A DNA stretch of 52,470 nt, taken from Macrostomum lignano (lineage: Eukaryota). The notes beneath the pieces were generated by a model, which ran no database searches, was not told the origin of the DNA, and was given only the letters and a program-made list of their open reading frames with translations. Made by a program: the position numbers and the translations under genes. The stretch lies in contig NIVC01004264.1 in NCBI GenBank assembly GCA_002269645.1, positions 1 through 52,470 on the forward strand, written 5' to 3'. Shown piece by piece: positions 1,641 through 52,116 of this stretch; the first letter of the stretch is position 1; every line of letters starts with the position of its first letter.

Positions 1641-3096
<1,456 letters not shown>

Positions 3097-8075: not shown

Positions 8076-8274
8076 TGACTTAAAGGTTGAACTTCGGGAC
8101 CAAAGGAGTGGTGCTATAGAAGGCACTCGAATAGCTATTTGTTTTTTTAAGCTGTAGTTTAAATAATCTTTCGCACCTGCTAATTCGCTAATTAAATCCG
8201 CCCTTTCCATTCCTACACGATTCAATTAGCGCTGTGGCGGCAACATCAAAGAGCGCTGACAGTCTATCCAAGCT

Positions 8275-8730: not shown

Positions 8731-8818
<88 letters not shown>

Positions 8819-12749: not shown

Positions 12750-13360
12750 TTTTGCTGTCCCTCTACCTCTCCCTCTACGTCTCCCTCTACCTCTCTACTT
12801 CTCCCGCTCCAGCTCCCTTCCCCTCTCTCTTTCTCCCCCTCGTCCTCTCACTCTCCTTATCCCTCTCCTTCTACCTCTCTAACTCTCCATCTCCCTCTAC
12901 CTCTACCTCTCGCTCTACCTCTCGCTCTACCTCTCCCTCTCCCTCTACCTCTCCCTCTCCTTCTACCTCTCTCTCTCCCTCTACCTCTCCCTCTCCCTCT
13001 CCCTCTACCTCTCCCTCTCACTCTCTCTACCTCTCCCTCTTCCTCTCCCTATTCCTCTATTCCTCTCCCTCTCACTCTACCTCTCCCTCTTCCTCTCCCT
13101 ATCCCTCTCCCTCTCCCTCTCCCTTTACCTCTTCTCTCCCTCTACCTCTCTACTTCTCTCGCTCTAACTCCCTTCTCTTCTCTCTTCCTCCCACTCCCTC
13201 TCCCTCTCCTTATCCCTCTCCCTCTCTCTTCCTCTTTCTACCCCCTCTTCCTCTCCGTCTACCTCTCTCTCTTCCTCTCTCTCTTCCCCTCTCTCTACCT
13301 CTGCCACTCCTTCTACTTCTCTTTAATCTCCCTCTCCCACTCCCTCTCCCTTTACCCCTC
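12750..13360. repeat. Polypyrimidine (CT-rich) low-complexity tract
   Basis: Almost purely C/T over ~600 bp. Confidence 0.93.
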
Positions 13361-13877
13361 CGTTTTTTACCCCACGAAAATGCCAAAATGAATCTCAATG
13401 ACTCTTCAAGTAATCCTAACTGCTACCAATAACGATACGAAGCAAAGAGAGCGCGCCCTGGTCAGAACGAGACAAACATTCGGTGTAGTAAAGCAATCTG
13501 GTCGCACGCCCGGCCCCCGCTCTCTGCCATGCAATTGACAAAATTCGTTGTTAGCCACGTGGCCCCAAAACAGAGAGAGCAAGATACAGATATACATGTA
13601 AGGGGGGCTGGCCTAAATCGCTAGAAACTGTGCAATCTTGATCTTCTGCTTTGGCCAGTCAGGAGGGGGAACATGCACATAGTAAAAGAGCGAGCGAGCG
13701 AGAAAGAGAGAGAATAATGAAAGGTAAGTAGAGTGCAACAGCTGTGACAGCCGAAAATATGGGAGGGGGCTTGCTTACGAAACTCCCCAAGATTATTTTT
13801 TATAATCGGCCAAAAAGCTGATCCTTAACCCGAAAAGCAACCCGCAGCGACTCAACAATCCAGTCGGCAACTGGAGC

Positions 13878-16800
13878 ATGACGAGAAGAATCTGCCGCAG
13901 CTTTGTGTTCTTGTTGGCATTTGCCTTGGTGGCAGCCGAGAGCAGCATCAGACTGGTTGGAAAGCCACTCCAGGTGCTTCGTCATGGCAACCAGGTAAGC
14001 TTGCTTTGTTCTTCACTATCATCGTATTCTGTTCTCTGAGAAGGACGCAGGAACCGCTAGAAGTTACGGTTTTATCCCGAAGTTTTGTCAGAATTAAAAT
14101 TCATTTGAAAGCCAATCTTGATTTAAATACGTTAGCAAGATGAAAAACAGGCATTAAAATTGTTGTCACGTCAAGTCCGACAAAATCTGCAAACTCGAAG
14201 ACACTGGGGCGTGACTGCAGGAAATTGCACATTATTTAATATTCTAGAAGACGTAGAATTTAAACTGAGTCAAGAAGACAATCGTCCCTCGTCAGTTACT
14301 CATTAACGTACGCTCGTACAAAATGTTACGGCTTGGACTTACTTCAGAAAACCAAATCGTTTTTAGTTGTACTGGTCGCTTAAACAGAATTTTGTTGCTG
14401 GTTCACTTTATATTTGGTAGAGCCAATCGGGTGAATAGAAGCCGCAGTGCAGAGTTCACCTTTTTACGAGCGTACATTCAGATTTCAAATTAAGTCGGAG
14501 TTCGATGCGACATGTTTAGCTCGTCCACGTTGGACGGCCATGGCCTCTTACTGGGTAGGCTCCTCAGCAAATGTCTGAGAGCGAGCTGCCACTTCATGAT
14601 TGCTTGAGTCTTCGAGTTGCGTAGATTGAGTCGAATATAAGCTCGTTGTGTTGAGCAGTCGGCAGCTGCGAATTTAATGACAGTTTACACAGTATCTGAG
14701 GTAACTGCGCTAAAATGGGGCGTCTGTAAAATCGTGATTTGGGCGACTGCTGATGAATTCGGCGACTTGAAGACGAGACTTACTCCGAATTGACTCAGAG
14801 GCAGTTAGAACTCCAACCCCCAGAAATTAGCGATTGCATTAGCTTGAATGAGCAGATGTGGCTACATTCGAATGCATAGATATTTCTGAGGGAAAATGAC
14901 AGTTCAGTGCTACTGAGTTGCTAACCCAATAAGCAGGCTCTGGGGTTACCGAAGCTGGAATGGCTTCGAGAATGACAAAATAAAGCTTATCGATGGTCGA
15001 TGCCGCACGCCTTCAGGAAGTCCTCGGATTCTTTGAAATCAAACTGTGGTCGATGCGGGTGGTGATCTCTCGCGGGATGCCCAATGTCGATGAGCAGCTC
15101 CGATCACGGTTCCTTCAGCTCTTTTCGCTAATGGCGCTCGCAGACCCGTTGCTGACGGACCACTCGATGTTGCCGTCCATTTCTTTCATTTCTTGCCTTT
15201 CTGACGCTTCTTTGTTACTTTCAATAGTAAAGCTAGGGAATAATATTTACCAGATTGGAGGAAAGAGTTTAGCAACAGGCTGGTTGTGTAAAGTCTTCTA
15301 CCAAATTTTGGGATTGAAGTTTACAGTTTTAGAGGTGTGTGAATCTATCTATTACAACACATTTCGTAATAATAATAACAAAAATTTGTCACTTTTTGTA
15401 AAAACAATAGCAAAAGTTTGAGTGAGTGAACGAAGCCCACAACGGGTGGGTTAGCTACGCAAAAGGAATAGAGGGATGGAGTGAGAACTAGAGGCTAAAG
15501 AGGGAAGAAGTGAGGACCAATCAGGAGGAGGACAGAAGTCGCTACATGAGAGTACTATAATAATTCCTCTCCTAAGACACTGCAATCTACCCCAGAAAAA
15601 ATAACTTTCAGGTCAATTTGAAACCCACAGTCTGGAAATAAATTGCGGAATTCCCCTATTACTCGCTTCATTTTCAATACCCCCAGTACTCAATCCGATT
15701 CACAAATGAGCCACAGCACAAGTCGTTCACAAAAGCATTTTTCCTGTCCTCTGGTTCTGTGCATTCTTTAATCAGTTAGTACAAAATCGACTTCCCCTCT
15801 CACTACATAAGACTGAGAAAGGGGAGAAAATCTCTCTGGGTGTGTCTGGTAGGATTTTCCATTAAGGATTTTCGAAAGTGTCTCTCTTAAAATCTGTACC
15901 AAAGTGCTCAGTTTTTCACTCGTAGTGAAAGAAATAATCTTCGAGTCTTTAACACACACACTCTCTTAGGGACACATTTTTAGATACATCTTGGGATCTT
16001 GGGAAAGAATTTCCAAAGAACGATTTATAAAGTACACATCCGATGCTAATCATAAAAGTGAAAATCCAGTTGTAATTTCTTAAGGGCAGATAATCAAATC
16101 GGACAACAAAACAACAACAACAAAATACGCGGCCCCGCAAGCAAAGTCAGTTAGAGCAGGGCGCGTCAGATGTCGCGCCGCAGAGCCTGGGAGCGAACGA
16201 AATCCGCTCCGTTGGCAGTGTCGGGCGCCCCAGCGTTGCACAGCAGGCAGTCCACGTATCGACGGGTTCGGGCCTGACCCCGCCTGAACGGGCCCTGCAA
16301 GGTGAGCAGCAGGACGTCCTGAACGGGTTGGGGGCAGTAGCCCTCGGCCCGGATCACGTGGCCCGCCAGCTGGAGTCGCCGTCGGCGCAGGATGGTGGAC
16401 GGGCGCTGCAGCTTGGCCCGATCGTACAGGGCCTCGGTCCCGACGCTCTCGTCAGCTCGAAAGGCCGCACGGAGCAGCCCTGAGTGCGCCGAGTCCAGCT
16501 GCCGCTCCAACGTAGCCGTCAGCGTCCACGTCTCGGCGTTGTAGAGCAGGACGTTTTCGACCACCGCCTGCCACAGCCGAGCCCTCTGGCGGTCGGGCAG
16601 CGCTTCGGACTGGAGGACGGCTCGGATCGAACGAAAGGCCGCCCAGGCAAGTCCTCTGCGCCGCCGGAGGTCTTCTTCCACGTGGGGCACCAGACCGCCG
16701 AGGTAGGTGAACCGCTGGCAGCGTGCGAGCCTGGTCGTCTGCCCATCTGCGCCGCGACATGTCAGGTCTGCTGGGATGTCGGCCGGCACAGTCAGCACCT

Positions 16801-19800: not shown

Positions 19801-22800
19801 GCGTCTACGCACCAGATATTGGCGCCGCCCGCCTAAGAGCCTGGCTGGCCGAGCCGGACAGGGACGAATTCCGGTTGGCGACGGCCCGGCTAGTGCGCGA
19901 GCTGCCGCTGCCACGATACTGGGAGCTGCCGATTGACTGCGCCAATGCCCAGCTGAAGGACGAGGGCGCCGAGGAACTCTTCGCTGGGAGCTGTGCCTCC
20001 TGGCCCGGTCGGATTCTCACGAGTCTGCAGGACCGCAGCGCAGAACGGGGGTGCAGAGCGGAGAAGGGTGAGCCAGACTGTCCAACTGCGTCGCTAGAGA
20101 ATAGTTGGTTACGATATACAAGGTAGCATTGATGGAAATGCGCCCGGCGCGCTGCGAGGTGCCCAAAGGGGTTTCTTTAAGGACAAATGGTTGCGAGACG
20201 ACATAACACTGTGAAATAATTGATGAGATATGCATTTATTTGGTATCCATCGCCAAATTGACGATTCTCGTATTCTTCAACTTTGCAAACGCACATAAAG
20301 GTTCATGAAAATGCCTTTAAATGCAAATTTAGCTCGTATTAGAGATTTATCTTCATTTTTGACACTATAAATTCACAAGTACTGCTTTATATCGAATGAA
20401 AAAGCACTGTAAGGATTTTTAATCTTCAGATAGTCATGAAGTAAAATTTGACAAAGACAGAACAACTTTGAGCTCGCCCATTGCATTTTCAAGCGGAATG
20501 GTATATCCTCTTGCTTCCAGGGCCTTTCAATATAAGTTTCAAAAGTTAGGCTTCCAGGGCCTTTCACGTTTACTTTTGTACTTCCCCTAAAAACTACTTG
20601 CCTTAATAGTAACTATAATTGGTACATGCGAAATTAATTTAGGATAAATTATTTTGTGCATAGCCTCTGACTTTCAGACAATTGAGCTCAGATAATTAAG
20701 CCCAGAAGACGGCTTCTCTAACGATTTTAATTAACAAGCGAAGAGAATTGAGCGCAATGTTTCGCTGATCGGCCTCCATTATAAGTTGCTTTGTGCAGTA
20801 ACTCGGTTTAAGCTGCTCTGGCTTTTCACAGTCTCATAGGGCCAATTTTATGAGCTGACAATGAAAAAAATACAAGGGAAAGGAGCCCAAGTAGAAAATC
20901 CGCGTCTCGATGAAAACATCGACAAGATACAATTCGCGAAAGACTTACGCTACATTAGAACCCAAACCAACATGCTCAACAGTCATTAGCGAGTCATTTT
21001 TCTATTTTTCCTGCAAAGAATAACTACTTCTTATTTGAAGTATTTGAAGTAATTAAAGTCAATGTGTCTACAAGTTCTCCACATGACGGCTTGTGACTCG
21101 AGCGAATTTACAAAGCTCAATAACACATATATTACAGTTGCATTAGGTACCAAGAAGGATGCAGCTTGTTGTTATATTTATTAAAACTGATCAGTGAGTA
21201 CGGGCTGTGTAGATTTCACGTTTACCATTCAGGCATTGTTCGGTTCAGAGTCAAATTTCAGAGTCAGGTCAGCTGTGAGGTTTGAGTGCTAGTCACATAT
21301 TCTTCGATAAAACGACTTCGATGTACGATGTTGCTTATTTACCAGGTAAATGAAGGTGGAATTTCTTCCTGAGCTTCGGGAACTGCTCATCCGACATGCT
21401 GGAAACGTCCATCTCGGTCGGATCATCCTTCGAATCACTTTGGCCCCTGTCGTCCTCCTGGGAAGGCTCGGCGACGACCAGGGCTGCGAACAGCAGAACT
21501 CCGAGAATCAGTTGCCACTTCATGGTTGCTTGAGTCGAGTAGAGTCTGAGCTTGTTGTGTTGAGCAGTCGGCTGCTGCTAATATATACGCATCGGATCGG
21601 CACATGTTTCCGATCCGTCGAGCAACGTTGTTTGATTTGAAGTCTTTTGCGCGAGCAGCGTTGCTTTAAGCGCATATCATGTAGCGTTTGCTTGCTTTTT
21701 GACACCCGAGCAATCAAACAAGTACCGCTCGAGCATTTTCACAGCGCAAATGTCTCTTAGGAACCTCACTGTACTAAACTGCATTTGAATATCAAGTCAG
21801 TTGTATAGTAAAGCCAAATGACACTATCTATCAATTGTGGAGAATATATGCGCAAAACAGGATATTTACAGATTTTTGTCTCGGCTACTGCGTGTCAATT
21901 TCTGATTAGTGGTTCTCAACTTTTCAGACGCTATTTAGAACTCCTTAGCTCGTAGATTTGATTCCTTACTTTCTTATTCCCGGGTAGCGAATTTTGGGAG
22001 CCGATTTCGTGTGCGACCGAACAAAGCAGAAAAATCGGAAAATTCAGACCTAGCGAAAGAAATGCATGTAAGCTCGCCGTTTGCCAGCTTTTGATATACT
22101 CTGTTTTCGAGTCGCTACGTCGCTACTTCGCTATCATCACTTACGCTGAAACCCAGCAGAGTTCCATTGAAAAACCGATGGTTCAATGCAGTCAGACGAG
22201 ACTACCTATAGTGTTTGAATTTTCTTAAATGTGCGGTTGCAAACCATGCTAAGCACACTGGACTAACACCATCTTGTCATCAGCTTTTGTACTGCAGAGC
22301 GTAGCACCACAGGCGTTACTGGCAGGAACATGAGAACCTGCAGGCAATCCAATGGCGCTTCTCTCCTGCCCTGTCATCAGCTCCGAGACATTATCTTGCG
22401 CCTCTAGGGAAGAGATATCCTTGATGTCACTATGAAATCTGTTCATGAAATTTGCTCACCCGAGTCGATTAAGGAATCAAATATAAGGAGCTCTAAATAG
22501 CACATGGCAAGCTTAGAACCCCAACTGGAAACTACAGGAATGGATTTCAACATTGAATTTAGCAGCAGCGCAAACAACTAATTGTAGAAAACAATCGCGA
22601 AGCCATATACAATATTTTTCCATATTCGATGGATAGTGTCATTTGGCTTTACTAATGCATCTGATAAAGAGCAAAATGCAATGCAGTGCAGTCTGCTGCG
22701 GTACGTAGGATAAATTTGCACTGAGAAAACGCTAGAGCGGTACTTGTTAGATTGCTCAGGTGTCAACAAGCAAATAAACGCTTCATGCTTTTCGGTTAAA

Positions 22801-25800
22801 GCAACGCCTGTCTCTGCTCACGCAAAAGCCGTCAGCTCAAACAACGTTTCTCAACGGACCGGAAACACGTGCCGATCCGATGCGTATAAATTTGAAGCTG
22901 CCGACAGCTCAACACAACAGCAAGCTCAGACTCGACTCAATCTACACACAGCTCGAAGAATCGACTCGACTCAAGCAATCATGAAGTGGCAACTGGTTCT
23001 CGGACTTCTGCTGTGCGCCGCCCTGGCCGTCGCCCAGCCCACCCAGGAGGAGGCCAAGGCCGAGAGTGAGTCTAAGGAGGATCCGTCCGACTCGGACGAT
23101 TCCAAGCTGTCGGAGGAGCAGTTCTCCAAGCTGGAAAAGAAGGGCTTCCACGTTCATTTTCATGGTTAGATGAGCCACATCGTACATCGCACAAGTGGTT
23201 TCATGGATCGGAAGATTAAGACAACTCACAGCTGACCTGACTCGGAACTCTACTCGCAACCGCCCGATTCTTAAATATGAACGTAAAATCTACACGGCAC
23301 TTATTCGCTGATCAGTTATAACAAATATAACAACCAGGACCATCTAATTAGGCTCCCAATAAAACTATAATTTTTGTGTTGTTGAGCGTTGTAAATTTCT
23401 TTAATTCAAAAGTCGTAATGTGGAGAACTTGTAGAGACTTGTAGCGTCTTGCAGTAAGTGAATTGTCGCACGAAATGTAGCAAAATGTGTTGATTCGATA
23501 TGATACTTATTCAGCGCTTATGGCTTATTCATTCATTTTCGCAAATATTTATCGTTCGCAACAAGCTTACTACTTTATGGACTATTGTGTAGTGCTTAAA
23601 TCCAAACTTTTCCGGTCATTTATTATATTGTTGGGGTGATTCGTAACTCGTCACCAAGATAAGACTAAACATATTATGCAGCTTTAGAGTTTGACATAAT
23701 TGTGGCTGAGTCACGCTAACTCACAGAATGTTCTCTTGTTTTTTGACCTAGTTGCGCCGCTTAATGAAACGTTCGATTCATGGAGCCATCATGAAGCAAA
23801 TGCCCATTTCAGGAGAAATCTCTAAGTGAAGGGCGTGACAATTTGACAAGGGACAATAGACAGAATACAACTGATTTTGGTTTCAATAAGATTTTATAAC
23901 ACGAATCGACAGCGAAGGCTCAAAGTGTGCGCAGATGTATCTCATCATTATCATTTCGCAATTCAAAAAAGCATTGTACACCTTTTACCTGACACCACAT
24001 GACCCCGCTCATTCTTAATTCATTGTATCATATCCTTGTACATTTAAATCGTTTTTTGGCCTCGCTATCCATGTAGAATACTACGAGCTAGTAGGAATAC
24101 CAAGCCATTTTCCGCCCGTCGAACTACCAAGAAGGGGGGATTCCCCAATGACAATTTTTTGTTGCGCCAGAACGGAGCAACGCAGGCATACGGAATTCAA
24201 GAACACGGGCAAAATTTTTGTTGCGCACCGTCTCAAACAAGAAAAAATTCGCCAGCCCTCCGGACCGTTGAGATATTCGACGATTCTGCCAGAAGATCCA
24301 GAAGATCGGATTTTTCCCTTGATGATGAAGTCCTAGTGTATTCAGTACACCCCTGTGCGCCAATCAGCCCTGCGCCTCAGTGCAGCCTCCAAATTTCATC
24401 AGTACGTCGACCATATGTGTCTGCAGCTCTGACTTCGTTGATCACTTGCCTTCATCCAGGCTCAGCTAATCTGTTGAAGGTACCGACGGCGTCAGGTTGA
24501 TGACGCATGTCCAGCAGTTGAGGCTTGCCCATTATTGAAGCTTGATCGGCGAAACAGGAGAATTTTGCAACAGCTCGTCCATAGTCACATGGGGCCACCT
24601 GTTGAAGGTCCAGAAGCTCCCCTCTCTTGGTAGTTTTACTGTTGAGCACTGTGAAATCAACAATAAAGTTGAGTTTATTTGAAATTGTGAAATGAATAAA
24701 TGAATAACCAAAAACTTCCTAATGAGTATCTTATAATTCAACACCTTTTTGTTGAATTTCCTGCGACAAATTATTAACTACAAGACGATTTACACTCGTT
24801 TCTTCAAGTGCTCCACATGACAACTTGCGACTTGACAAAAATGAAAAAGCTTGTCAACACAAATATTTTGGATTTTTAGGTGCTTATTTAGATCGTGCTG
24901 GTTGTTATATTTGTTAAAACTGATCAGCGAATAAGGGCTGTGTAGATTTCACGCTTAATTTTTAGGAGTTGGGCGGTTCCGATCAGAGTCCAAAGTACGG
25001 TCAGCTGTGAGTTGTCTTAATCTTCGATGAAGCGACTTCGACGTACGATGCTGCTTATTTACCAGGTAAATGGAGATGGAATTTCTTCCTCAGCTTCGGG
25101 AACTGCTCCTCCGACATCTTGGAATCGTCCGAGTCGGACGGATCCTCCTTCGACTCACTTTCGGCCTTGGCCTCTGAGGGCCCAGCGACGGCCAGGGCTG
25201 CAAACAGCAGAAGTCCGAGAACCAGTTGCCACTTCATGATTGCTTGAGTCGTGTTGAGTCTGAGCTTGTTTTCTTGAGCAGTCAGCAGTCGGCGAATTTA
25301 TGCTCATCGGATCGGCACGTGTTTCCTGTCTGATCCGATGAGCGACGTTGTTTGATTTGCAATCTTTCGCTTGAGCAGAGAAGCGTTACTTTAACCAAAT
25401 ATCATTGCAGCGTCTATTTGCTTTATGACACCTGAGCAATCAAACAAGTAAGGCTCCAGCGTTTCTAAGTGTAAATTTATCCTACACACTGCACTGCGCG
25501 GCACTCTATACGGATTTTAATGATTAGCATAAGAAAACCAAATGACACTATATCTATCGATTGTGGAGATTAAAGTTGCGAAATCGGGATATCTACAGAT
25601 ATGTATTTCGGCTACTGCGTGTCGATTTCTGCAGTTTCTGATGGCGGTTCTCAACTTGTCAGGTGCTACTTAGAACTACTTTGATTGTTTAAAGTTGTGA
25701 TACGGGTAAGCGGATTTAGTGAGCCGACAACCGGACGCATGGCCGGCCAGATATGCATGGAAGCGCACAGTTTGCCAGCTTTTATTCTTTCTTCATCTCG

Positions 25801-28800
25801 ATCCTTCGACATCAAACTGTCTGAATATATTCTTTAATCACTGCAAAGCCCCCTGAGCTCTCATTAAAGTAACCACTAGATGAGGTTCAGATTGTTGATT
25901 GGGGCTGCGAGATGGACTCAATCTGGATTGTCTGATATAGTTAATGTAGCTTGGTTTACCTGGCAGATCTTTATTTAAAAGGTTTCCAATTCACATCTTT
26001 ATCTCACGTTGGCTACTTACTCATTAGAGGGGACTACTTTCCCTCACAACTTCTTACCCCTTAAAGGTTTACCTGGCAACTTGCCATGACTTAGTGCTGC
26101 ATTTTCATGAAATATTTACAATACAACCAGGTATTCATTTCTTCACTAAATACGAGCGTATGCGAAAGTCATTCAAAGTAGCAAAACTGCCACTTTAGAA
26201 TCCCGGTAGAGAGTGTAAAAGAAGATGAGAATAATTCGCAAGACGAGGTAAAGGCTAGTAGTTTTCGTGGCGGGGTAGTTTTCTACAATACGATTTTTGC
26301 TAAATCTCACTTTCTTCAATCCTCTCAAGACTGAAATGGTGATTTTGTTATTAAAAACTTTTATCGCCTTTTTAAATTTGATAAACTCTTCTATCGGGTA
26401 GATTGATAGACTGATAGATTCTTAGTTTCTCTTTTTCAATGTCTCTACCGGGATTCCCACATGATATTCGCTCAAAGGAACGATGAGGCTGCGTCCTGGT
26501 CTCTTGAACAGCTTGAACACGACCGGATTGGACGCATTTGACGATTTAGTTCTGGCAGACTGACGCAAATGTTCAGCGGTCCCGCTAATTGTTGCCAATC
26601 TTGGTCGTCAATGTATTCATTTATTTTTCGCCGATCTTATTGTGAGAAAGTGACGATGCTCATCAAATGTGTTCATGAAATTTTCAACGTGTGGTGTCAA
26701 ATTAAAAGCTAATTTGATACAAAAAAGGTAAAATTATGTCGGTATCATTTTCAATTCATGCGCTTCACCGATCTTGAATGGTTTGAAATTCGTCCTCTGA
26801 GATGTACTTCTTCTCGATGGCCTTTAAGATAAACTATATGATCAATATATGGAACTGTTGCTGATGCCTAGCTGACTTGGAATTGACAATTGAGTTATAG
26901 TTAGCCTACTCGCTACGCTCGCATTTTTCCTATGTTACTTACTGGCTCGATCGTCCCAATTCGAAAAATAAGGAGTTTTGGCCATAGACAATTTTTAGAT
27001 TTTATTATTTCTTTCTTTGTCTAGAGTGTTGGTGTGCTAATAAAATCGGCTTCACTTTAGACCCCTCTATTGGCAGTCTATGTATACTCGATATTCTCTG
27101 GTGAAACCACAGATAGTAATAAATAGTATGTTAATTGTTATAGTATCTGTGAGTCGAACTAATAAAATACTTCTTAGTTTTTAACTTTTGTCGCTCGCTT
27201 TGTAAGGTAGCTGACGGAGTTTATTACATTTCTCAGTAAGTTAAGTGGGCCTTAATGGTAGATTGTGTAGTAGGTCCTAGAATTGATAAATATTCAAAAA
27301 CTACTCGTGCTTCACACGCATTATTCTGGGATGCATTATTCTATGGCCTACCCTTTGTCGCCCAATTTTTACGTACCGCATGTAATATCGCTTATGACTC
27401 TTGACGATTTGGCCATAGGAAACTTTTACAGCTTAGATAGAAAGACCAGGGAGAAAATAGAGAAGGTAAGACCGACCATACACTATAATTTCTCTTGACT
27501 TAAAGCTCCTTTCACCGAGACTCTTGAAGCAGTATCAATATATAGCCGCTAAGTAGTATTGGTTTTGTCAGCCTAACTGAGAATAAAGCCATCCAAAGTG
27601 AGAATCCTGCCTACGCTGACTGCGAAGGGCCTGGCTGCGTGCAGCCTTAGTCTATGGGCCATAGACTATAAAGGATAAGCAAAGTGATAAAAAGCCATCC
27701 AATGTGAGAATCGATCGCTTTTTCTCTTTCCCCCAGCTCTCTTCACTCCTCCAAGCGCAACTCCTCCATCACTGCTTCTCCATCACCCACAGTCTCGTTG
27801 CTTTCTTGCCTATTTATCCAACACTTAGAAGGCTGCCGCGTGGGACCTGCATTGCAGACGACTCTTTGGGCAGTGCATTGAGGGACGGCTATTTTAACTC
27901 TTTAGTTTACTGTACTGTATCATCCAGTGTGTTCCTGTTTCCGTTATTCCGTTCAAGCTATTGGCTAGTCATATGGCTCAGAAGGTATAAAAATAAAAGA
28001 ATACAACGCATAGACCAATCGATTCTCACATTGGATGGCTTTTTATCACTTTGCTTGTCCTTTATAGTCTATGGCCCATAGACTAAGGCTGCACGCAGCC
28101 AGGCCCTTCGCAGTCAGCGTAGGCAGGATTCTCACTTTGGATGGCTTTTTTCTCAGTTAGGCTGACAAAACCAATAGTAGCAGAGTTGAGTTTTAACCCC
28201 TTCAAATTATGATTTGCCAAGCAAATCGATCCCCATCAAGTACGTCAGGCAAATCCACTAAGCATTTATTTTCTGGTTTTTCCGTATTTTCTGCTTTGTT
28301 CAATAAAAAAATCGACTTCCAAATCCGCTTACTCAGATCGAGTAAACAATCGAATCTAAGGAGCGCAAAAAACCCATCTGACAAGTCGAGAACAACCGCC
28401 AGAACCTGCAGAAATAGACACGCAGTAGCCGAAATAACAATCTGTAGATATCCCAAATTGTACGCATTTTTTCTCCACAGACGATAGATAGTGTCATATT
28501 GGTTTGCTATGCAAAATAGTCAAGTAGAGTGCATTGAAGTGCAGTGCCGTAGGATAAATTTGCACTGAAAAACGCTAGAGCGGTACTTTTTGATTGCTCG
28601 GGTGTCAACAAGCAAATAAACGCTACATGATATTCGGGTAAAGCAACGCCTGTCTCTGCTCACGCAAAAGCCGTCAGCTCAAACAACGTCTCTCAACGGA
28701 CCGGAAACACGTGCCGATCCGATGCGTATAAATTCGCAGCTGCCGACTGCTCAACACAACAAGCTCAGGCTCGACTCAATCTACACACAGCTCGAAGAAT

Positions 28801-31800
28801 CGACTCGACTCAAGCAATCATGAAGTGGCAACTGGTTCTCGGACTTCTGCTGTGCGCCGCCCTGGCCGTCGCCCAGCCCACCCAGGAGGAGGCCAAGGCC
28901 GAGAGTGAGTCGAAGGAGGATCCGTCCGACCCAGACGATTCCAAGCTGTCGGAGGAGCATTTCTCGATGCTGAAGAAGAAAGGCTTCCACGTTCATTTTC
29001 ATGGTTAGATGAGCCACATCGTACATCGCACAAGTGGTTTCATGGATCGGAAGATTAAGACAACTCACAGCTGACCTGACTCGGAACTCTGACTTTGAAC
29101 TTCTTAAATAGAAAACCTGAAATCTTCACTGCCCTTATTCGCTGATCAGTTATAACAAATATAACAACCAGTATCATCTAATTAGGCACCCAGTAAAGCT
29201 ATAATTTTTGTGTTGTTGAGCGTTGTAAATTTCTTTAATTCGAAAGTCGTAATGTTGAGAACTTGTAGCTCGTAGATCATCACAATCGAATTGAGCACAC
29301 AAAGCAACTATACTATTAATGTTGTTAAGCTTTGTAATTTTTCAAGTTGCGAATCGTAATGTGGAGAACTTGTTAATGCTTGCAAATAATGCTTTGTCGC
29401 ATGAAATTCAGCGAAACTTGTTGATGCGATAGATAATTTGCGACTTGATGCGATAAGGTCAGCAATTATCAGTTATTTCTTCGTTTTCGCCGAATCTTAC
29501 CATTTAAAAAAGAGTTAGTGCTTAATGAACTGTTTCAAAAAATATTAGCTACATGAAGGAAGATTTCAAAAAATCATTTATGATTTCTTGTGGCGATTCG
29601 TTATTCGTCACCGACAATATGGCTAACAAAGACACGCAGTTAACCGTAAATACGCTATCTTTGAACCTTTGGCGCACTACGAGCATTTCCTGGAATTTTC
29701 CCGTGTTTTTTCGAATACAACTGCTCTTAGTGGCTTAACTGCGTGTGCGGTAGGTGAGCCGACATGAGTAGATAGCTTTTAAATTGACAACATGGAAGGC
29801 CACGTCCCCTAGACTTAGAATTCCACAAAGGGTCAAATGGAAGGCATAAGAACAAAAATTTGGTACCCTGCCATTGGAACCCACTTGGGATTCGGTGATC
29901 CTAGGTCAAGGAGTGTGGTCGGGCTCTGAGAGCAGAATCTAACAAACGGAGGATTTGAGGACGAAGCCAAGTCTTCAGAATCTGAGCTCTCCTCAGCTAC
30001 TCTGGTGGGGTTCGGGGGTCGAGGGGAGAAATCTCTTCCATTTTGTCATCGGAGCCTGAGGACTCTGGCGGAAATCTCCAAGTCAATCTCTCAAACGAGC
30101 CCCGACGGAATGAGAAAAGGATTGAATCCTGTATAGTCTCCTTGACGGGAGAATCGTTCATAAATTGAATTTAGTATATTATGACTAACCTCCACTGCCA
30201 AAGGAGCAACTTTCTGTCTACAAATAAATCTATTGCCCTATTGCCCCTCTGCGTCAGTAAATTTTATTAAGACTGCAAAGTTGCACAGGCCAGTCCTTAT
30301 CCTAATCCATGAACCCTGGATGCGCAACGGTAAGTTGCTCAACATTCCTTATGGCTACTCTGACTTCAGTGTTTGTGGCCCGGAGAACAGTTGCCCTACA
30401 GTGACCATCCTCGCTGCCAGCCATCTCCAGGCTTGGCTGAGGGCGATCTTTCAGATGGAGGTCTTTGTGTCATCCAATCTGACAATCTCTCTTGGCGTGA
30501 CAGGGTGATAGGGTAATATCCTAGGTAACAGGGACCCTAACTGCGCCGAGCGCAATACTACGAATTTCAGAAGGCTGAGCTGTGCTTGGGGGGACGACCT
30601 TAACACACATCATAAGCACTAGAACAGCAAAAACACCAATGCTAGAGGGTAGGAGATTCTTGTCCTCATCTATTTTTGAAATATTATGCTCTGCAACCAC
30701 AGAAGCACTCTTACCTTCGAAAATGCCACATGCACCAATGTTCTCGATGCCACACTCGTTACCCCAGACTCTGATCTGATCAACGAAAACCCACTTTATC
30801 TGACGTCTGCTCCATCGCCTTTAACATCGCGGAAACTCAGCTCCAGGCCTTGAGTACTTGGAGGGGTAACGTCCGCAACACTGATTGGACAGCCTATAAG
30901 GTTACCTTCGATCTGCACCTGCAGGAACTCACGGACGAGCGTCCGATTGAGGCCTGGGAGGAATTCGATCAAATGGCTGAGAGGCAAACAGACTGCATTA
31001 CTGCAGCTTTTGAAGCGGCCTGTCTTGTCCGTGCCTACAAAGGCAAGACTTCTTTCAGTCCGTGGTGTAGCCCGGAGAAGCTCAGACTGAAGGCCAAAAG
31101 CCCTCACCGCAGCGCCACAAAAACTTGTAACCCAAAAACTTCAATTCTGAGGTGCGGAAGGCCAAGGTATGTGGCGGATATACTGCAATGAGTTGGATCA
31201 CGAAACCTACGTCTAGGCTTGTCAAGCCCCTGACAATTGGAAAAAATGTCCAAACTAGCCATCATAAGAAATTATGATGGCTCTCTAACTAAAAGCCCTT
31301 AAGAAATGATTTAACAAATGCTCAGCACCATCTTTGCAAAGTTACCCACTGCCAGAACAGAGCCCTATGTAGGGAGCCACTTTGGTGGCAGGCATCGTTA
31401 CAAAAGACTCTATCACCTGTGCGGTTGGAACCTTCAAGCCCTTCAACTCTCTTGGAGCTGATGGTAACTACCCAGTTCTTCTTCACGAAGCATCTGTCAT
31501 ATCTTCATTTCGCTTTACATGCAATAGTAGAACGGGCATGGCTGGGCGACACTTATGCCTTCAGTCTTTCCCTCAACCTTGAAGGTGCTTTTGATAATGT
31601 AATCATCAAGGTGTGTCAGGTGGCTCTTAAAAATCACAAAGCTCATGCTACTCTCCACGGTGCATTATGAACATGATTTCCATCCCCACGGTCACTGCTT
31701 AACTTTGCGTGCAAATCCCTTCCACCAGATTCTGAAAGGGAGGATCCAAAGGCTGAGCTCTCACGCCGACGCTCTGAAGCCTGGTCATGAGTGCCTTTCG

Positions 31801-34800
31801 AGTGATCCCTGGCCACCAGGCCCTGTCTTCATTTTCGGTTGGTTACGGTAACGACGCCACTGCCATTGGAGGCAGGGCCGTCACCCTGCACGCCCAGACA
31901 TTTACTTGATCCAAAGCTTTATCCGCAGAGCTCAATCCATGAAAGAGGTTTAAAACTTTGAGGTTGAGCCCAACACTCTCGGCATTATGTTAGTTCACCA
32001 GCAAAATACAGTGGAGCATGAGACCTCTGCAGTCATACGACGGATATATTGCCCTCACCCAGAAAACTACCTTTGACAAGTTAAGAGCTACCATCGGAAA
32101 CTGCAAAAAGCGACACAAAGTAGCCGAGACAAAAATCTGTAGACATTCCGAATTTATTCTGCGCAGGCGATAGATAGTGTCATTCGGCTTTACTATGCAA
32201 CAGATTAAGAGTCAAATGCAGTGCAGTACACTGCAGAGTACTGCGATACGTAAGATGAACTGAGAAAACACTAGAGTGATACTTTTTTTGCTCAGTTGTT
32301 ATAAAACAAATATACACTACATAAAATTCTTTTAAAGCAACGCCTGTCCCTGCTCACGCAAAAGCCTTCATCTCAAACAACGTCTCTCAACGGACCGGAA
32401 ACACGTGCCGATCCGATGCGTATAAATTCGTAGCTGCCGACTGCTCAACACAACAAGCTCAGACTCGACTCAATCTACACACAGCTCGAAGAATCGACTC
32501 GGCTCAAGCAATCATGAAGTGGCAACTGGTTCTCGGACTTCTGCTGTGCGCCGCCCTGGCCGTCGCCCAGCCCACCCAGGAGGAGGCCAAGGCCGAGAGT
32601 GAGTCGAAGGAGGATCCGTCCGACTCGGACGATTCCAAGCTGTCGGAGGAGCAGTTCTCCAAGCTGGAAAAGAAGGGCTTCCATGTTCATTTTCATGGTT
32701 AGATGAGCCACATCGTACATCGCACAAGTGGTTTCATGGATCGGAAGATTAAGACAACTCACAGCTGACCTGACTCGGAACTCTACTCGCAACCGCCCGA
32801 TTCTTAAATATGAACGTAAAATCTACACAGCACTTATTCGCTGATCAGTTATAACAAATATAACAACCAGGACCATCTAATTGGGCACACAAAACAACTA
32901 AAAAATTAATTTCGTTGAGCTTTGTAATTTCTTCAAGTGTCAAGTCCTCGTGGAACACTTGTGGATACATCTACTTGCACATAATGATTTTTAGCTTTCA
33001 TTACACATCGTACATCGAAGTAGCTTTATGGAAGCTGGCCGGACTCTGAAATCTGACTACTCAATTATCTAGTGATACGAGTAAAAGTAAACTCTGCACA
33101 CTTCAAGCTTTTTATGCTTCAAGCACAGACACACACACACACACTGCTTGCTAAATTTAAGAGGTGACTTTAATGAAAAGCTTCTTTTATACCCTTTTCT
33201 TCATCGTTGTTGGTAAATGTGCACGTTATTGATGACTCGCGGTTAAAAATGGACTGTCTCTATTAGATTTTTTGATCAGATTTGGAATGAATCGCTACAG
33301 CGAAAATATTGTTGCGGGGAATATGCTAAAATTTTGGTGGGCATATTGACCCCATATATAATTACGTTGATCAATAAATAATATTCATTTGTCACATTTC
33401 TGAATATATTTAAGATTCACTCGTGGATACGTCCACACAGCCATCTAATTGACCATCAAATCACGCGAACCATGTGAAAAGGAATAAAAATATGTACCGG
33501 CTGTGTGATGGCACCAAATTGGCGATATTTGATCGCTGTATGAACGAGCGTTAAAGGCACTTACTGTGTACACTGAGAAAAGTCAGGCCATAATATATGC
33601 ACCCACGAAAATGTGTGCTAGTTGGATTAGCGAACGATTGAATTTGATCGTCCACTTGCAGGTTGAGTAAAATGGCGTCAACAGCAACACATTTGAATCT
33701 CGCGCGAAGGCACATGTACTTTGGTTTGCCTGGGCTCAGACATTCAAGGCACAGAGTGTACTGAGATGCTTGACAATAAGAATGTTAAAGCCGCTGAATG
33801 CCCGGCTGAAGTTTATGCCTGTATATTCTGTGGTGTGCCTGCGTACGCATCGGTGTACTTAAAGGTAATCAGAATGGCCTGCCTTAACTACTTGCCTCCT
33901 CACTGGAAAATAGAGATCTTGACATGCAGTTGCACCAGCGACAGATAAGGAAGAAACTGTAATTTATTGTTTTTTATCTAACAAGTTTTTCTAGTCATTT
34001 TTAGTTTACCTTCCACTACAAAAGTACCTTGCCTAAAATTTACCCTCAATAATCCATCAATCCAACAGAGCGAGTGCAGTTCAACGAATTTCCGTTGGCA
34101 GTCCATGGAGACATTGGCGTGCTGACTCACCTGCAGCCGATTAACGAGCCTGAGCTGCTCCAACATTGGGATAGCAATGGCGGCAGAGGAGTGTGAGCAG
34201 CTCTATGCTGATGCTTTTAAATGTTTTACCTCTTCCGTTTAGAAGGTAACTCCCTCGTCTGTCTCCTGCGTCGAATGGAAGCTCACTCTTCCAGTTACTC
34301 TGACTCTCCAGCTTCACCTCACGACTCTCACTAACGGCTCGTTCACACCATTGTATTGTATGTATTGTTCAAATCGACAAAATTATGGGAAGATAACGTA
34401 AAAATTGGCTTAATTTTATGGCAGTGTAAACTAGCATTAGATCTTCCCATAAAAATATATTTCAGATTCACCTTCTCAACCTGGATCTACTTGGAGAGGT
34501 CATGCGATTCGAGCTGGTGCAACATCCTGCTGGGCATCGACGCCGAGAACCGACATCGGTCGCCCGGCCTGTTGATAACCAAAGACAACAGGCTGCACTA
34601 CCAGGGACATCAATCCAACCGGGAAGACTCGAAGGGATCCGCCTTCCTCAGTGGCTATCGGCTTCCCCTGAGGACTTGGTTGCGGATTGTGTTGATCTGG
34701 CAGCCGCACGAGGTTCGTAAACATTTTTACCAGCATTATTGGGCCTAAAGTAGGATATTGGCAGGGGTCAGGATCCCCAGCGGCAAAAATTTCGAATCCG

Positions 34801-41933: not shown

Positions 41934-41967
41934 CCGGAAACACGTGCCGATCCGATGCGTATAAATT
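41934..41967 (+). promoter_or_regulatory. Family promoter module (E-box + TATA)
   Basis: Identical core block. Confidence 0.7.
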
Positions 41968-42052: not shown

Positions 42053-42235
42053 ATGAAGTGGCAACTGGTTCTCGGACTTCTGGTGCTCGCAGCCCTGGTC
42101 GTTGTCGAGCCCTCGGAGGCCAAGGCCGAAAGTGAGTCGAAGGAGGATCCGTCCGACTCGGACGATTCCAAGATGTCGGAGGAGCAGTTCCCGAAGCTGA
42201 GGAAAAAATTCCATCTCCATTTACCTGGTAAATAA
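42053..42235 (+). CDS. Secreted micropeptide precursor, type A (FHLHLP-GK)
   Basis: Intact ORF downstream of SEL1L3. Confidence 0.86.
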   Translation: MKWQLVLGLLVLAALVVVEPSEAKAESESKEDPSDSDDSKMSEEQFPKLRKKFHLHLPGK

Positions 42236-43470: not shown

Positions 43471-43653
43471 CTAACCATGAAAATGAACGTGGAAGCCCTT
43501 CTTTTCCAGCTTGGAGAACTGCTCCTCCGACAGCTTGGAATCGTCCGAGTCGGACGGATCCTCCTTCGACTCACTTTCGGCCTTGGCCTCCGAGGGCTGG
43601 GCGACGGCCAGGGCTGCGAATAGCAGAAGTCCGAGAACCAGTTGCCACTTCAT
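43471..43653 (-). CDS. Secreted micropeptide precursor, type B (GFHVHFH-G)
   Basis: Intact ORF, tail-to-tail with the 42053 copy. Confidence 0.87.
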   Translation of the reverse strand: MKWQLVLGLLLFAALAVAQPSEAKAESESKEDPSDSDDSKLSEEQFSKLEKKGFHVHFHG

Positions 43654-43740: not shown

Positions 43741-43773
43741 ATTTATACGCATCAGATCGGCACGTGTTTCCGG
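43741..43773 (-). promoter_or_regulatory. Family promoter module (E-box + TATA)
   Basis: Reverse complement reads CCGGAAACACGTGCCGATCTGATGCGTATAAAT. Confidence 0.7.
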
Positions 43774-51814: not shown

Positions 51815-51997
51815 CTAACCATGAAAATGAACGTGGAAGCCCTTCTTCCTCAGCTTCGGGAACTGCTCCTCCGACAGCTTGGAATCGTCCGAGTCGGATG
51901 GATCCTCCTTCGACTCACTTTCGGCCTTGGCCTCCGAGGGCTGGGCGACGGCCAGGGCTGCGAATAGCAGAAGTCCGAGAACCAGTTGCCACTTCAT
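51815..51997 (-). CDS. Secreted micropeptide precursor, chimeric (type A spacer end FPKLRKK + type B peptide GFHVHFH-G)
   Basis: Intact ORF. Confidence 0.86.
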   Translation of the reverse strand: MKWQLVLGLLLFAALAVAQPSEAKAESESKEDPSDSDDSKLSEEQFPKLRKKGFHVHFHG

Positions 51998-52082: not shown

Positions 52083-52116
52083 AATTTATACGCATCAGAT
52101 CGGCACGTGTTTCCGG
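52083..52116 (-). promoter_or_regulatory. Family promoter module (E-box + TATA)
   Basis: Same block as 43741-43773. Confidence 0.7.

What the first reader, a model, noticed from the sequence alone, without database searches (positions are those of the whole stretch)
23134..23169. Two mature peptide classes map onto two classic Cu(II)-binding N-termini, with an alternating hydrophobic/His pattern
Seen: type B (5 copies) gives G-F-H-V-H-F-H-G and type A (3 copies) gives F-H-L-H-L-P-G-K; they are homologous and differ by a leading Gly. Established: a free N-terminal Xaa-Xaa-His is the ATCUN Cu/Ni site, also found in piscidin-type antimicrobial peptides, and Xaa-His is a second high-affinity Cu(II) motif. 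Strictly alternating hydrophobic/His heptapeptides (designed IHIHIQI type) self-assemble into Zn-binding catalytic amyloids. Inference: if cleavage is directly after KK, the family makes one ATCUN and one Xaa-His peptide that could chelate metal, produce ROS or form metal-crosslinked fibrils.
Basis: inference. Interest (0 to 1): 0.75.

Follow-up and report, generated by a model that had tools for sequence, protein, structure and literature searches.

The report
Flatworm gene array for tiny histidine peptides
The window holds eight copies of a small flatworm (Macrostomum lignano) gene that should release 6-7-residue, amidated peptides of alternating hydrophobic and histidine residues. These are the histidine branch of a large, undescribed family whose other members look like arginine-rich antimicrobial peptides.

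Summary
The window is a Macrostomum lignano contig with 8 intact intronless genes: 5 end in KK-GFHVHFHG-stop and 3 in KK-FHLHLPGK-stop. Each has its own conserved promoter box. Each encodes a signal peptide, an acidic propiece, an invariant KK and a short C-terminal peptide.

The predicted products are GFHVHFH-NH2 and FHLHLP-NH2.

Within each class the KK+peptide cassette shows only synonymous change, across 24 cassettes on 4 contigs. The prepro region and flanks are mosaics shared between the classes.

Profile searches found at least 25 paralogue clusters, all in M. lignano plus one unassigned contig. They share the promoter, signal peptide, acidic propiece and KK. Their peptides are FIHIHF-NH2, FVRVHVRF-NH2, IFRVRVRI-NH2, FVRVRARIRL-NH2 and 18-31-mers with charge +7 to +12. 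This is the build of antimicrobial-peptide precursors.

His replaces Arg in phase. The conserved theme is therefore an amidated, amphipathic beta-strand peptide with alternating hydrophobic and basic residues, not a fixed N-terminal copper site.

The ATCUN (GFH) and Xaa-His (FH) termini do follow from KK cleavage, but metal binding, assembly and activity are untested. No expression data or publication was found. Verdict: a new variant of a known kind, and interesting.

The parts
23134..23169 (+). The finding itself: E-K-K processing site, GFHVHFH, amide-donor Gly and stop, in copy B1
22981..23169 (+). Gene B1 CDS (62 aa): signal peptide, acidic propiece, EKK, GFHVHFH-G-stop
22861..22891 (+). 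B1 promoter box GGAAACACGTGCCGATCCGATGCGTATAAAT (CACGTG E-box plus TATA), 90 nt upstream of the ATG
21335..21523 (-). Gene A1 CDS (62 aa). Its propiece is divergent, but RKK-FHLHLP-GK-stop is unchanged
21581..21611 (-). A1 promoter box (CATGTG and TATATAT variant)
25055..25237 (-). Gene A2 CDS (60 aa), RKK-FHLHLP-GK-stop
25296..25326 (-). A2 promoter box
28820..29008 (+). Gene B2 CDS (62 aa), KKK-GFHVHFH-G-stop
28703..28733 (+). B2 promoter box
32514..32702 (+). Gene B3 CDS (62 aa), EKK-GFHVHFH-G-stop
32397..32427 (+). B3 promoter box
42053..42235 (+). Gene A3 CDS (60 aa), RKK-FHLHLP-GK-stop. Its prepro region is identical to that of a class-B gene elsewhere in the genome (P0009)
41936..41966 (+). 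A3 promoter box
43471..43653 (-). Gene B4 CDS (60 aa), EKK-GFHVHFH-G-stop
43741..43771 (-). B4 promoter box
51815..51997 (-). Gene B5 CDS (60 aa), RKK-GFHVHFH-G-stop
52084..52114 (-). B5 promoter box
14490..14597 (-). Decayed relic of a paralogue of the Arg-type subfamily. It keeps the 5'UTR homology and MKWQLAL, has internal deletions and frameshifts, and has lost the E-box part of the promoter

Best explanation
The locus is a tandem, mixed-orientation array of a gene family so far found only in Macrostomum. The genes encode secreted prepropeptides.

Gene structure (shown). Each ~0.85-kb intronless unit has its own TATA/E-box promoter. It encodes an 18-residue signal peptide, a 34-36-residue acidic propiece, an invariant Lys-Lys, a 6-7-residue peptide of alternating hydrophobic and His residues, and a terminal Gly or Gly-Lys.

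Processing (inferred). The signal peptide is removed, probably at A-V-A|Q or V-V-A|E. A convertase cuts after KK. The trailing Lys is trimmed by a carboxypeptidase. The Gly is converted to a C-terminal amide. The products are GFHVHFH-NH2 and FHLHLP-NH2.

Family context (shown). These genes are the His-substituted branch of a superfamily with the same promoter box, signal peptide, acidic propiece and KK. In the other branches the C-terminal cassette is hypervariable. It ranges from 8-10-mers of alternating hydrophobic/Arg residues (IFRVRVRI-NH2, FVRVRARIRL-NH2) to strongly cationic 18-31-mers.

Function (inferred). The family most likely makes secreted host-defence or effector peptides of the amphipathic beta-strand type. 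The His peptides would be switchable versions. They carry about +3 to +4 at granule-like pH 5.5, are almost uncharged at seawater pH, and have i/i+2 His pairs plus an ATCUN or Xaa-His N-terminus. Their activity or assembly would therefore depend on pH and on Cu/Zn/Ni.

Both peptide classes are kept by selection while gene conversion homogenises the rest of the gene.
For: Anatomy:
- There are 8 intact ORFs and a codon alignment with the Gly codon in register in both classes.
- The promoter box is present 8/8 with 0 expected by chance. It also sits upstream of every copy in L001-L005, including the Arg-type genes.

Constraint:
- Within a class the KK+peptide segment has pN = 0 and pS = 0.10. The propiece has pN = 0.058 and pS = 0.18 (18 copies).
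- All 24 cassettes found on 4 contigs encode the same peptide within their class.

Mosaicism:
- Flanks and prepro do not separate class A from class B; for example the A3 5' flank is 92% identical to B2 but 83-84% to A2 and A1.
- The cassette does separate them: 90-100% identity within a class and 72-86% between.
- A3 and the class-B protein P0009 have identical prepro sequences.
- Synonymous divergence between the classes is 0.43 in the cassette against 0.13-0.19 in the prepro region.

Superfamily:
- A profile search of 1.84 billion proteins and a word-indexed profile search return only M. lignano hypothetical proteins and one Logan contig.
- Their sequences are, and the predicted products, charges and propiece charges.
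- Short members have their hydrophobic moment maximum at 180 degrees.
- Arg-type, mixed and His-type genes lie side by side on one contig.
- The in-phase codon relation is CGT GTT CAT against CAC GTT CAT.

Transcription and processing capacity:
- The BOX15_Mlig gene models come from an RNA-seq-guided transcriptome assembly (PMC5730564), so the genes are transcribed.
- M. lignano has a PC2 homologue and GYIRFamide-positive neurons, so it has dibasic processing and amidation machinery (PMC4490696).
Against: - No peptide has been observed and no expression site is known. Seven supplement look-ups gave nothing: five searches found none of the gene ids and two papers had no supplementary text held.
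- At 6-7 residues and about +0.4 to +1.4 net charge at pH 7-8, the His peptides would be poor membrane-active antimicrobials on their own.
- KK is a less favoured convertase site than KR or RR (own knowledge).
- Short amidated peptides behind basic sites also fit the flatworm prohormone definition (PMC2953531).
- The substitution counts rest on about five independent synonymous events, and the pairwise comparisons are not independent.
- The lineage restriction may partly reflect poor database coverage of other macrostomids.
Confidence: 0.5

Rival explanations
1. The genes are neuropeptide or peptide-hormone precursors. The amidated 6-10-mers would act on receptors as signalling molecules, and the tandem amplification would only reflect the duplicated, repeat-rich M. 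lignano genome.
For: - The genes meet all three prohormone criteria of Collins et al. 2010: a signal sequence, basic cleavage sites flanking the peptide, and a length under 200 aa (PMC2953531).
- Known flatworm neuropeptides include short amidated Arg/hydrophobic peptides such as AVRLMRLa and GFVRIa.
- The planarin prohormone genes are also neighbouring duplicates in opposite orientation.
- A PC2 homologue is expressed in M. lignano neurons.
Against: - The same prepro region carries 18-31-residue peptides of charge +7 to +12, including a Pro/Arg-rich 31-mer and a two-Cys 24-mer. These look like antimicrobial peptides, not neuropeptides.
- The mature region is hypervariable while the prepro region is conserved. 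Neuropeptide families usually show the opposite.
- Each precursor carries a single peptide.
- There are dozens of copies, all with one shared promoter box.
- No homologue was found outside Macrostomum.
Confidence: 0.2
2. The selected function would be N-terminal Cu(II)/Ni(II) chelation by an ATCUN site (GFH) and an Xaa-His site (FH), giving metal sequestration or ROS-based killing.
For: - KK cleavage, which the family as a whole supports, gives free GFH- and FH- termini.
- A third His-only subfamily, FIHIHF-NH2, also has His3.
- ATCUN coordination uses the terminal NH2, two backbone nitrogens and the His3 imidazole, as in the piscidins (PMC10398361).
- The His-type genes are the most amplified branch: 24 cassettes in about 110 kb examined.
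Against: - The His position relative to the N-terminus is not conserved among close relatives. It is H5 in IFRVHVRF, H7 in IFRVRVHI, H9 in IFRVRARIHI, and absent in IFRVRVRI.
- In an alternating peptide that starts with one or two hydrophobic residues, a His at position 2 or 3 is automatic. The motif match therefore carries little information.
- Nothing in the locus relates to metals.
Confidence: 0.12
3. The His peptides are self-assembling material. They would be soluble and cationic in acidic granules, then form beta-sheet fibrils cross-linked by Zn or Cu once released into seawater at about pH 8. The fibrils would serve as a structural, adhesive or catalytic matrix.
For: - The hydrophobic/His alternation is strict, with the hydrophobic moment maximal at 180 degrees.
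- Computed charge falls from +3.6 (class B) or +2.7 (class A) at pH 5.5 to +0.4 at pH 8.1.
- A C-terminal amide is predicted.
- The very high gene dosage suits a bulk product.
Against: - The designed peptides are N-acetylated heptamers. The natural peptides would have a free amine, and class A has only 6 residues ending in Pro.
- The paralogues are highly charged Arg peptides, which are unlikely to serve as bulk structural material.
- No experimental data exist.
Confidence: 0.1
4. The ORFs are non-functional, carried along in a repeated DNA element, and no peptide is made.
For: The window is rich in minisatellites and retroelements. No protein-level evidence exists.
Against: - All 24 cassettes examined are intact, and within a class they show only synonymous change.
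- The promoter box and ATG context are conserved.
- The gene models are RNA-seq-derived.
- A genuinely decayed copy at 14490-14597 shows what loss of constraint looks like.
Confidence: 0.03

Closest known systems
Amphibian skin antimicrobial-peptide precursors (preprodermaseptin/temporin type; own knowledge)
   Same: Both have a conserved signal peptide and acidic propiece, a dibasic site, and a single hypervariable C-terminal peptide that often ends in Gly or Gly-Lys for amidation. Both are multigene families that diversify quickly.
   Different: There is no sequence homology. The site is KK rather than KR. The peptides are much shorter (6-10 residues in most subfamilies) and are beta-strand-type rather than helical. 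The His-only products are nearly uncharged at neutral pH.
Designed short beta-sheet antimicrobials of the (X-Arg/Lys)n-NH2 type, e.g. IRIKIRIK-NH2 (own knowledge)
   Same: The Arg-type paralogues (IFRVRVRI-NH2, FVRVRVRL-NH2) have the same 8-residue alternating hydrophobic/cationic amidated design.
   Different: The paralogues are natural and gene-encoded. The window's own peptides carry His instead of Arg or Lys.
[quoted passage not shown]
   Same: Both have alternating hydrophobic/His residues, 6-7 residues and a C-terminal amide. The cores -HVH- and -HLHL- are shared.
   Different: The natural peptides would have a free, non-acetylated N-terminus. They use aromatic Phe and a terminal Pro or His. 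Assembly, Zn binding and catalysis are untested.
ATCUN-bearing and His-rich host-defence peptides: piscidins (PMC10398361) and clavanins (PMC13370850, abstract)
   Same: Both have the N-terminal Xaa-Xaa-His pattern (GFH here and FIH in paralogue P0040) and several His residues. Clavanins are a His-rich precedent for antimicrobial peptides that bind Cu and Zn.
   Different: Those peptides are helical and more than 20 residues long. Here the peptides have 6-7 residues, and the His position simply follows the alternation.
Flatworm prohormones (Collins et al. 2010, PMC2953531), including the tandem planarin genes
   Same: Both are small (<200 aa) with a signal peptide, basic cleavage sites and amidation. 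The planarin genes are also neighbouring duplicates in opposite orientation.
   Different: There is no homology to any described npp/spp family. The mature region is hypervariable and there is one peptide per precursor. Some members are long, highly cationic peptides.
C. elegans nlp-29/cnc-2 clusters (own knowledge)
   Same: Both are tandem clusters of tiny secreted-peptide genes that look like neuropeptide genes. The C. elegans ones turned out to be epidermal antimicrobial effectors.
   Different: The sequences are unrelated (Gly/Tyr-rich there). No induction data exist here.

Membership tests
ATCUN (NH2-Xaa-Xaa-His) Cu(II)/Ni(II) site | His at position 3 of the mature peptide, and residue 2 not Pro | tested here: met
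   Class B gives G-F-H if cleaved after KK. Paralogue P0040 gives F-I-H. Class A has His at position 2 instead, the Xaa-His pattern.
ATCUN (NH2-Xaa-Xaa-His) Cu(II)/Ni(II) site | A free, unblocked alpha-amino group exactly two residues before the His, meaning the true N-terminus lies after KK | not testable with these tools
   This is inferred only. KK directly precedes the variable peptide in 22 of 23 precursors. Mass spectrometry is needed.
ATCUN (NH2-Xaa-Xaa-His) Cu(II)/Ni(II) site | The motif position is conserved among relatives, as expected if it were the selected feature | tested here: not met
   Close paralogues have Arg at that position (IFRVHVRF, FVRVRVRL, IFRVRVRI). Their His, when present, is at position 5, 7 or 9.
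Flatworm prohormone / neuropeptide precursor (criteria of PMC2953531) | A signal sequence, basic cleavage sites flanking the peptide, and fewer than 200 aa | tested here: met
   The hydrophobic N-terminus is MKWQLVLGLLLCAALAVA, followed by KK, within 60-62 aa. The signal peptide was judged by inspection; no predictor was available.
Flatworm prohormone / neuropeptide precursor (criteria of PMC2953531) | Neuronal or endocrine expression and a signalling role | not testable with these tools
   No expression record was found.
Flatworm prohormone / neuropeptide precursor (criteria of PMC2953531) | Homology to a described neuropeptide family, or conservation of the mature peptide across species | tested here: not met
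   Only M. lignano proteins and one unassigned contig were found among 1.84 and 5.8 billion proteins. There were no Pfam hits. The mature region is the variable part.
Antimicrobial-peptide precursor with a conserved prepro region and a hypervariable C-terminal peptide | The signal peptide and anionic propiece are conserved across members whose mature peptides differ | tested here: met
   See alignments A3. Propiece net charge is -2 to -10 in all 23 precursors.
Antimicrobial-peptide precursor with a conserved prepro region and a hypervariable C-terminal peptide | The mature peptide is cationic and amphipathic | tested here: inconclusive
   This is met by the paralogues, at +3 to +12 with hydrophobic moment maxima at 180 or about 105 degrees. 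The window's own peptides are amphipathic but carry only +0.4 to +1.4 at pH 7-8, rising to +2.7 to +3.6 at pH 5.5.
Antimicrobial-peptide precursor with a conserved prepro region and a hypervariable C-terminal peptide | Antimicrobial activity, or induction by microbes | not testable with these tools
   Needs synthetic peptides and challenge experiments.
C-terminally amidated secretory peptides | A Gly directly before the stop, or before basic residue(s) and the stop | tested here: met
   The GGT codon is aligned in both classes and is followed by TAG or AAA TAA. 20 of the 23 superfamily precursors end in G or GK.
Catalytic-amyloid-type heptapeptides | Alternating hydrophobic/His residues, about 7 residues, and an amidated C-terminus | tested here: met
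   GFHVHFH-NH2 and FHLHLP-NH2 compare with acetyl-LHLHLRL-amide and acetyl-IHVHLQI-amide. The N-acetyl group of the designed peptides is not predicted here.
Catalytic-amyloid-type heptapeptides | Fibril formation, Zn(II) binding and esterase activity | not testable with these tools
   Needs ThT/TEM and p-nitrophenyl acetate assays.

The most novel reading that the evidence does not exclude
A flatworm has evolved natural counterparts of laboratory-designed catalytic-amyloid peptides, starting from an arginine-rich antimicrobial-peptide family. These are ribosomally made, amidated 6-7-mers of alternating hydrophobic and His residues. They would be stored protonated with an acidic propiece. On release into seawater they would lose charge, bind Cu or Zn through an ATCUN or Xaa-His N-terminus and i/i+2 His pairs, and assemble into metal-loaded beta-sheet fibrils. 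The fibrils would have antimicrobial, catalytic or adhesive function. Two peptide classes would be actively maintained against gene conversion because they do different jobs, or co-assemble.
Probability: 0.12. Interest if true: 0.85.

Novelty: new variant of a known kind. Interest (0 to 1): 0.6.

Why it matters
No antimicrobial-type peptide family of free-living flatworms turned up in the searchable literature, and none of the peptide strings or gene ids appears in it.

If the reading is right, a transgenic, RNAi-tractable model animal carries a large, fast-diversifying effector-peptide superfamily that is annotated only as 'hypothetical protein'.

Its most amplified branch is a natural Arg-to-His replacement series: FVRVRVRL, then FVRVHVRF, then FIHIHF and GFHVHFH, then FHLHLP. 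That series tests directly how swapping a fixed charge for a pH- and metal-switchable one changes a minimal beta-strand peptide.

The peptides have 6-10 residues, so they are cheap to synthesise. They overlap designed catalytic amyloids and designed beta-sheet antimicrobials.

The mosaic gene structure also gives a clean case of a roughly 30-bp functional cassette held in two forms while the rest of the gene is homogenised.

Tried and rejected
- Literature searches found nothing for the peptide strings, for the BOX15/Mlig gene ids, or for Macrostomum antimicrobial or His-rich peptides.
- McVeigh et al. 2009 (PMC2749192), the survey of flatworm neuropeptide families, is not held. I could not check whether any 'npp' entry from M. 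lignano ESTs matches.
- I looked for expression data in the supplements of seven papers. Five searches found none of the gene ids (searches cover six searches in all). Two papers had no supplement text held. Many of the stored files are truncated, so the cell type remains unknown.
- Pfam gave only chance-level hits, such as Lock_Gag1-like at the cut-off on a duplicated acidic repeat in P0032. There is no annotated domain.
- Rfam and tRNA scans of the window found nothing.
- I rejected the antisense ORFs overlapping the genes (for example 22942-23259, 105 aa). The TATA box, the ATG context, the excess of synonymous over non-synonymous change, and the annotated transcripts all fit the sense frame.
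- I rejected the view that the classes differ only by a leading Gly.
- I did not interpret the promoter box as a site for any particular factor. CACGTG is a generic bHLH-ZIP E-box, and nothing here identifies the factor.
- P0027 (1598 aa, E = 4.7e-5) matches only profile positions 14-43, so I treat it as a low-complexity chance hit.
- Structure prediction was not run. A 60-residue precursor made of a signal peptide, an acidic linker and a 7-mer would not give an informative model.
Full report
**What is there.**

The finding's coordinates (23134-23169, + strand) read E-K-K-G-F-H-V-H-F-H-G-stop. They are the last 12 codons of a 62-codon ORF at 22981-23169.

A six-frame scan of the 52,470-base window finds eight intact ORFs of 60-62 codons, all starting MKWQL.
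- Five end in KK-GFHVHFHG-stop (class B: 22981+, 28820+, 32514+, 43471-, 51815-).
- Three end in RKK-FHLHLPGK-stop (class A: 21335-, 25055-, 42053+).

[quoted passage not shown] The window is thus a contig of that species.

**Anatomy of one unit.**

The repeated unit is about 0.85 kb. It has roughly 370 bp upstream, the uninterrupted CDS, and roughly 270 bp downstream. Copies are 72-90% identical and lie in both orientations, separated by unrelated DNA.

Ninety bases upstream of each ATG lies an almost invariant box, GGAAACACGTGCCGATCCGATGCGTATAAAT, made of a CACGTG E-box and a TATA box. It occurs exactly once per gene, 8 of 8, with none expected in shuffled sequence.

The protein has four parts:
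- a hydrophobic signal peptide, with a likely cut after A-V-A, V-V-A or V-V-V (by inspection);
- a 34-36-residue acidic propiece of net charge -3 to -6;
- Lys-Lys;
- the short peptide.

The GenBank models for the paralogous copies come from an RNA-seq-guided transcriptome assembly (PMC5730564). The family is therefore transcribed.

In the codon alignment the two classes share a GGT (Gly) codon in register. It is followed by TAG in class B and by AAA TAA in class A, a 1-nt indel.

A Gly before the stop, or before a basic residue and the stop, is the standard amide-donor signal of secretory peptides.

M. lignano has a PC2-type convertase and amidated (GYIRFamide-immunoreactive) peptides (PMC4490696). 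The machinery therefore exists.

The classes also differ by more than a leading Gly: a GGC indel plus V/L, F/L and H/P.

**Constraint.**

I fetched three further M. lignano contigs.
- L001 is syntenic with the window.
- L002 and L003 carry more copies.

Together with the window there are 18 class-B and 6 class-A cassettes. Every one encodes the same peptide within its class.

Nei-Gojobori counts on 18 copies give the following within-class values:

| Segment | pN | pS |
|---|---|---|
| KK + peptide | 0 | 0.10 |
| Propiece | 0.058 | 0.18 |
| Signal peptide | 0.060 | 0.14 |

The independent events in the cassette are few: about five synonymous and no non-synonymous changes. The evidence is clear in direction but modest in weight.

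The divergent A1 subclass makes the same point. Its propiece is heavily substituted, yet EQFPKLRKK-FHLHLPGK is untouched.

**Mosaic genes, two maintained cassettes.**

The flanks and the prepro region do not sort by class.
- The A3 5' flank is 92% identical to B2 but only 83-84% to A2 and A1.
- B5's prepro CDS is 94-95% identical to A2 and A3 but 92% to B1.
- The KK+peptide segment does sort cleanly: 90-100% within a class and 72-86% between.

A3 and a class-B protein from another contig (P0009) have identical prepro sequences. Between the classes, synonymous divergence is 0.43 in the cassette against 0.13-0.19 in the prepro region.

The simplest reading is gene conversion or unequal exchange that homogenises the genes, while selection keeps two distinct ~30-bp cassettes.

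**The wider family changes the interpretation.**

I ran a profile of the family against 1.84 billion representative proteins. I then ran a word-indexed profile search seeded with those hits. Together they recover at least 25 clusters. All are from M. lignano, apart from one 929-nt Logan contig of unknown origin.

All have the same signal peptide (MKWQLALGLLLCAALAVA), an acidic propiece and KK. The C-terminal peptide differs:
- FIHIHF-NH2;
- FVRVHVRF-NH2, IFRVHVRF-NH2, IFRVRVHI-NH2, IFRVRVRI-NH2 and FVRVRVRL-NH2;
- IFRVRARIHI-NH2, WLRVRARVRI-NH2, FVRVRARIRL-NH2 and FIRARVRVRL-NH2;
- FRIRIRWGRVARNVLRLL-NH2 (+7);
- a 29-mer (+11);
- a two-Cys 24-mer (+10);
- WRRRRRFRWRKAIRVAGKVAKAVL (+11);
- a Pro/Arg-rich 31-mer (+12).

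The promoter box sits upstream of these genes too. On contig NIVC01000619.1 an FVRVHVRF gene, two FIHIHF genes and a WLRVRARVRI gene lie side by side. GFHVHFH genes follow 150 kb further on.

Codon alignment shows the peptides are in phase. TTC GTC CGT GTT CAT GTT AGG TTC GGT TAG (FVRVHVRFG) aligns with GGC TTC CAC GTT CAT TTT CAT GGT TAG (GFHVHFHG). Arg CGT and His CAC/CAT are one or two nucleotide changes apart.

The short members have their hydrophobic moment maximum at 180 degrees, which marks amphipathic beta-strands.

**Best explanation.**

A conserved signal peptide and anionic propiece, a dibasic site, one hypervariable and mostly cationic, amphipathic, amidated C-terminal peptide, and rapid tandem amplification make up the classic build of antimicrobial-peptide precursors, such as those of frog skin (own knowledge). 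The 8-mers match designed (hydrophobic-Arg/Lys)4-NH2 antimicrobials (own knowledge).

I therefore read the superfamily as secreted host-defence or effector peptides. I read the window's genes as its His-substituted, most amplified branch.

His makes the peptides switchable. Computed charge is +3.6 (class B) or +2.7 (class A) at pH 5.5 and +0.4 at pH 8.1. The i/i+2 His pairs and the N-terminus offer metal sites.

My estimates:
- about 0.75 that the peptides are made as predicted;
- about 0.5 for the full statement including the defence or effector role.

**The copper idea.**

GFH- then fits the ATCUN pattern, which uses the terminal NH2, two backbone nitrogens and the His3 imidazole (PMC10398361). 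FH- fits the Xaa-His pattern. FIHIHF adds a third His3 case.

I expect the synthetic peptides to bind Cu(II) in vitro. That expectation rests on chemistry (own knowledge), not on any test here.

The match says little about function, for two reasons.
- Any alternating peptide that begins with one or two hydrophobic residues puts a His at position 2 or 3.
- The nearest relatives put Arg there.

The resemblance to designed catalytic amyloids is real at the sequence level (acetyl-LHLHLRL-amide, acetyl-IHVHLQI-amide, acetyl-IHIHIQI-amide; PMC10008563). The predicted C-terminal amide strengthens it. The natural peptides would, however, lack the N-acetyl group.

**Rivals.**

- A neuropeptide or hormone role (0.2) fits the Collins criteria and the existence of short Arg/hydrophobic amidated flatworm neuropeptides. 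It does not fit the long polycationic paralogues, the variable mature region or the gene dosage.
- Dedicated Cu chelation or ROS production: 0.12.
- pH- and metal-triggered self-assembly: 0.1.
- Non-functional ORFs: 0.03.

**Limits.**

No peptide, expression site or activity has been observed. Seven supplement look-ups and all literature searches were empty. McVeigh et al. 2009 could not be read.

Signal-peptide cleavage was judged by eye. The lineage restriction may partly reflect thin sampling of macrostomids in the protein databases.

**Novelty.**

The architecture is a known kind. The family itself appears undescribed. Natural, amidated, strictly alternating hydrophobic/His 6-7-mers derived in phase from Arg peptides are an unusual variant.

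Noticed in passing
window 1-13432: The first 13 kb are a patchwork of unrelated minisatellites. Periods are 14, 34/68, 4, 38, 53, 32, 34/110, 22, 17 and 6, and arrays reach 1.7 kb. This explains the strong GC and AT skews there.
   Followed up: partly
window 16166-19288 (-): An intact 1040-aa ORF with endonuclease/exonuclease/phosphatase and reverse-transcriptase domains. It is a possibly active non-LTR (LINE) retrotransposon lying between peptide genes, and it accounts for the 63% GC block.
   Followed up: partly
window 48854-50350 (-) and 50737-51360 (-): A 498-aa ORF with a partial reverse-transcriptase domain. Next to it is a 207-aa ORF with a SAP DNA-binding domain. Both lie just upstream of gene B5.
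   Followed up: no
window 14490-14597 (-), context 14400-14700: A relic pseudogene of a different (Arg-type) subfamily. It keeps the 5'UTR and MKWQLAL. The signal and propiece are deleted or frameshifted (traces of EPTQ-EAMAV-NVDE remain). The E-box half of the promoter is gone.
   Followed up: yes
L005 (NIVC01000619.1:28923-49243) 379-573(-), 6284-6475(+), 10130-10321(+), 13444-13644(+): Arg-type, mixed and His-only paralogues sit side by side: FVRVHVRFG, two FIHIHFG genes and WLRVRARVRIG. A retrotransposon pol ORF (830 aa, 2572-5064) lies between them.
   Followed up: partly
window 42053-42235 versus P0009 (L003 10001-10183): A class-A gene and a class-B gene have identical prepro protein sequences. 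The peptide cassette behaves as a separate ~30-bp module within genes that exchange sequence.
   Followed up: yes
3' flanks of all eight genes, e.g. window 23300-23340: A conserved 3'UTR block, TTCGCTGATCAGTTATAACAAATATAACAACCAG, lies about 140 bp after the stop. A conserved CACAGCTGACC lies about 75 bp after the stop. A canonical AATAAA is present in only one copy (B1, about 23357).
   Followed up: no
L004 (Logan SRR31628392 contig 42504, 929 nt): The only relative not assigned to M. lignano. It is a genomic contig with the same promoter box (GGAAAAACGTGGC...CATAAAT) and a 31-residue Pro/Arg-rich peptide, FLRVRLPRVRMPRVRLPRVRLPRLRVRFRWS. The organism behind the run is unknown.
   Followed up: partly
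public annotation of paralogues (P0012, P0043): Some public gene models are chimeric. P0012 fuses an antisense translation of a neighbouring copy to a class-B precursor. UniRef names P0043 'SERPIN domain-containing protein' although it is a truncated member of this family.
   Followed up: no
P0032 (Mlig004661): This paralogue has an internal tandem duplication of 22 propiece residues (AMAVLEALSNVDESSMSEEAVDN twice). That repeat causes a borderline Pfam 'Lock_Gag1-like' hit, which is probably spurious.
   Followed up: partly
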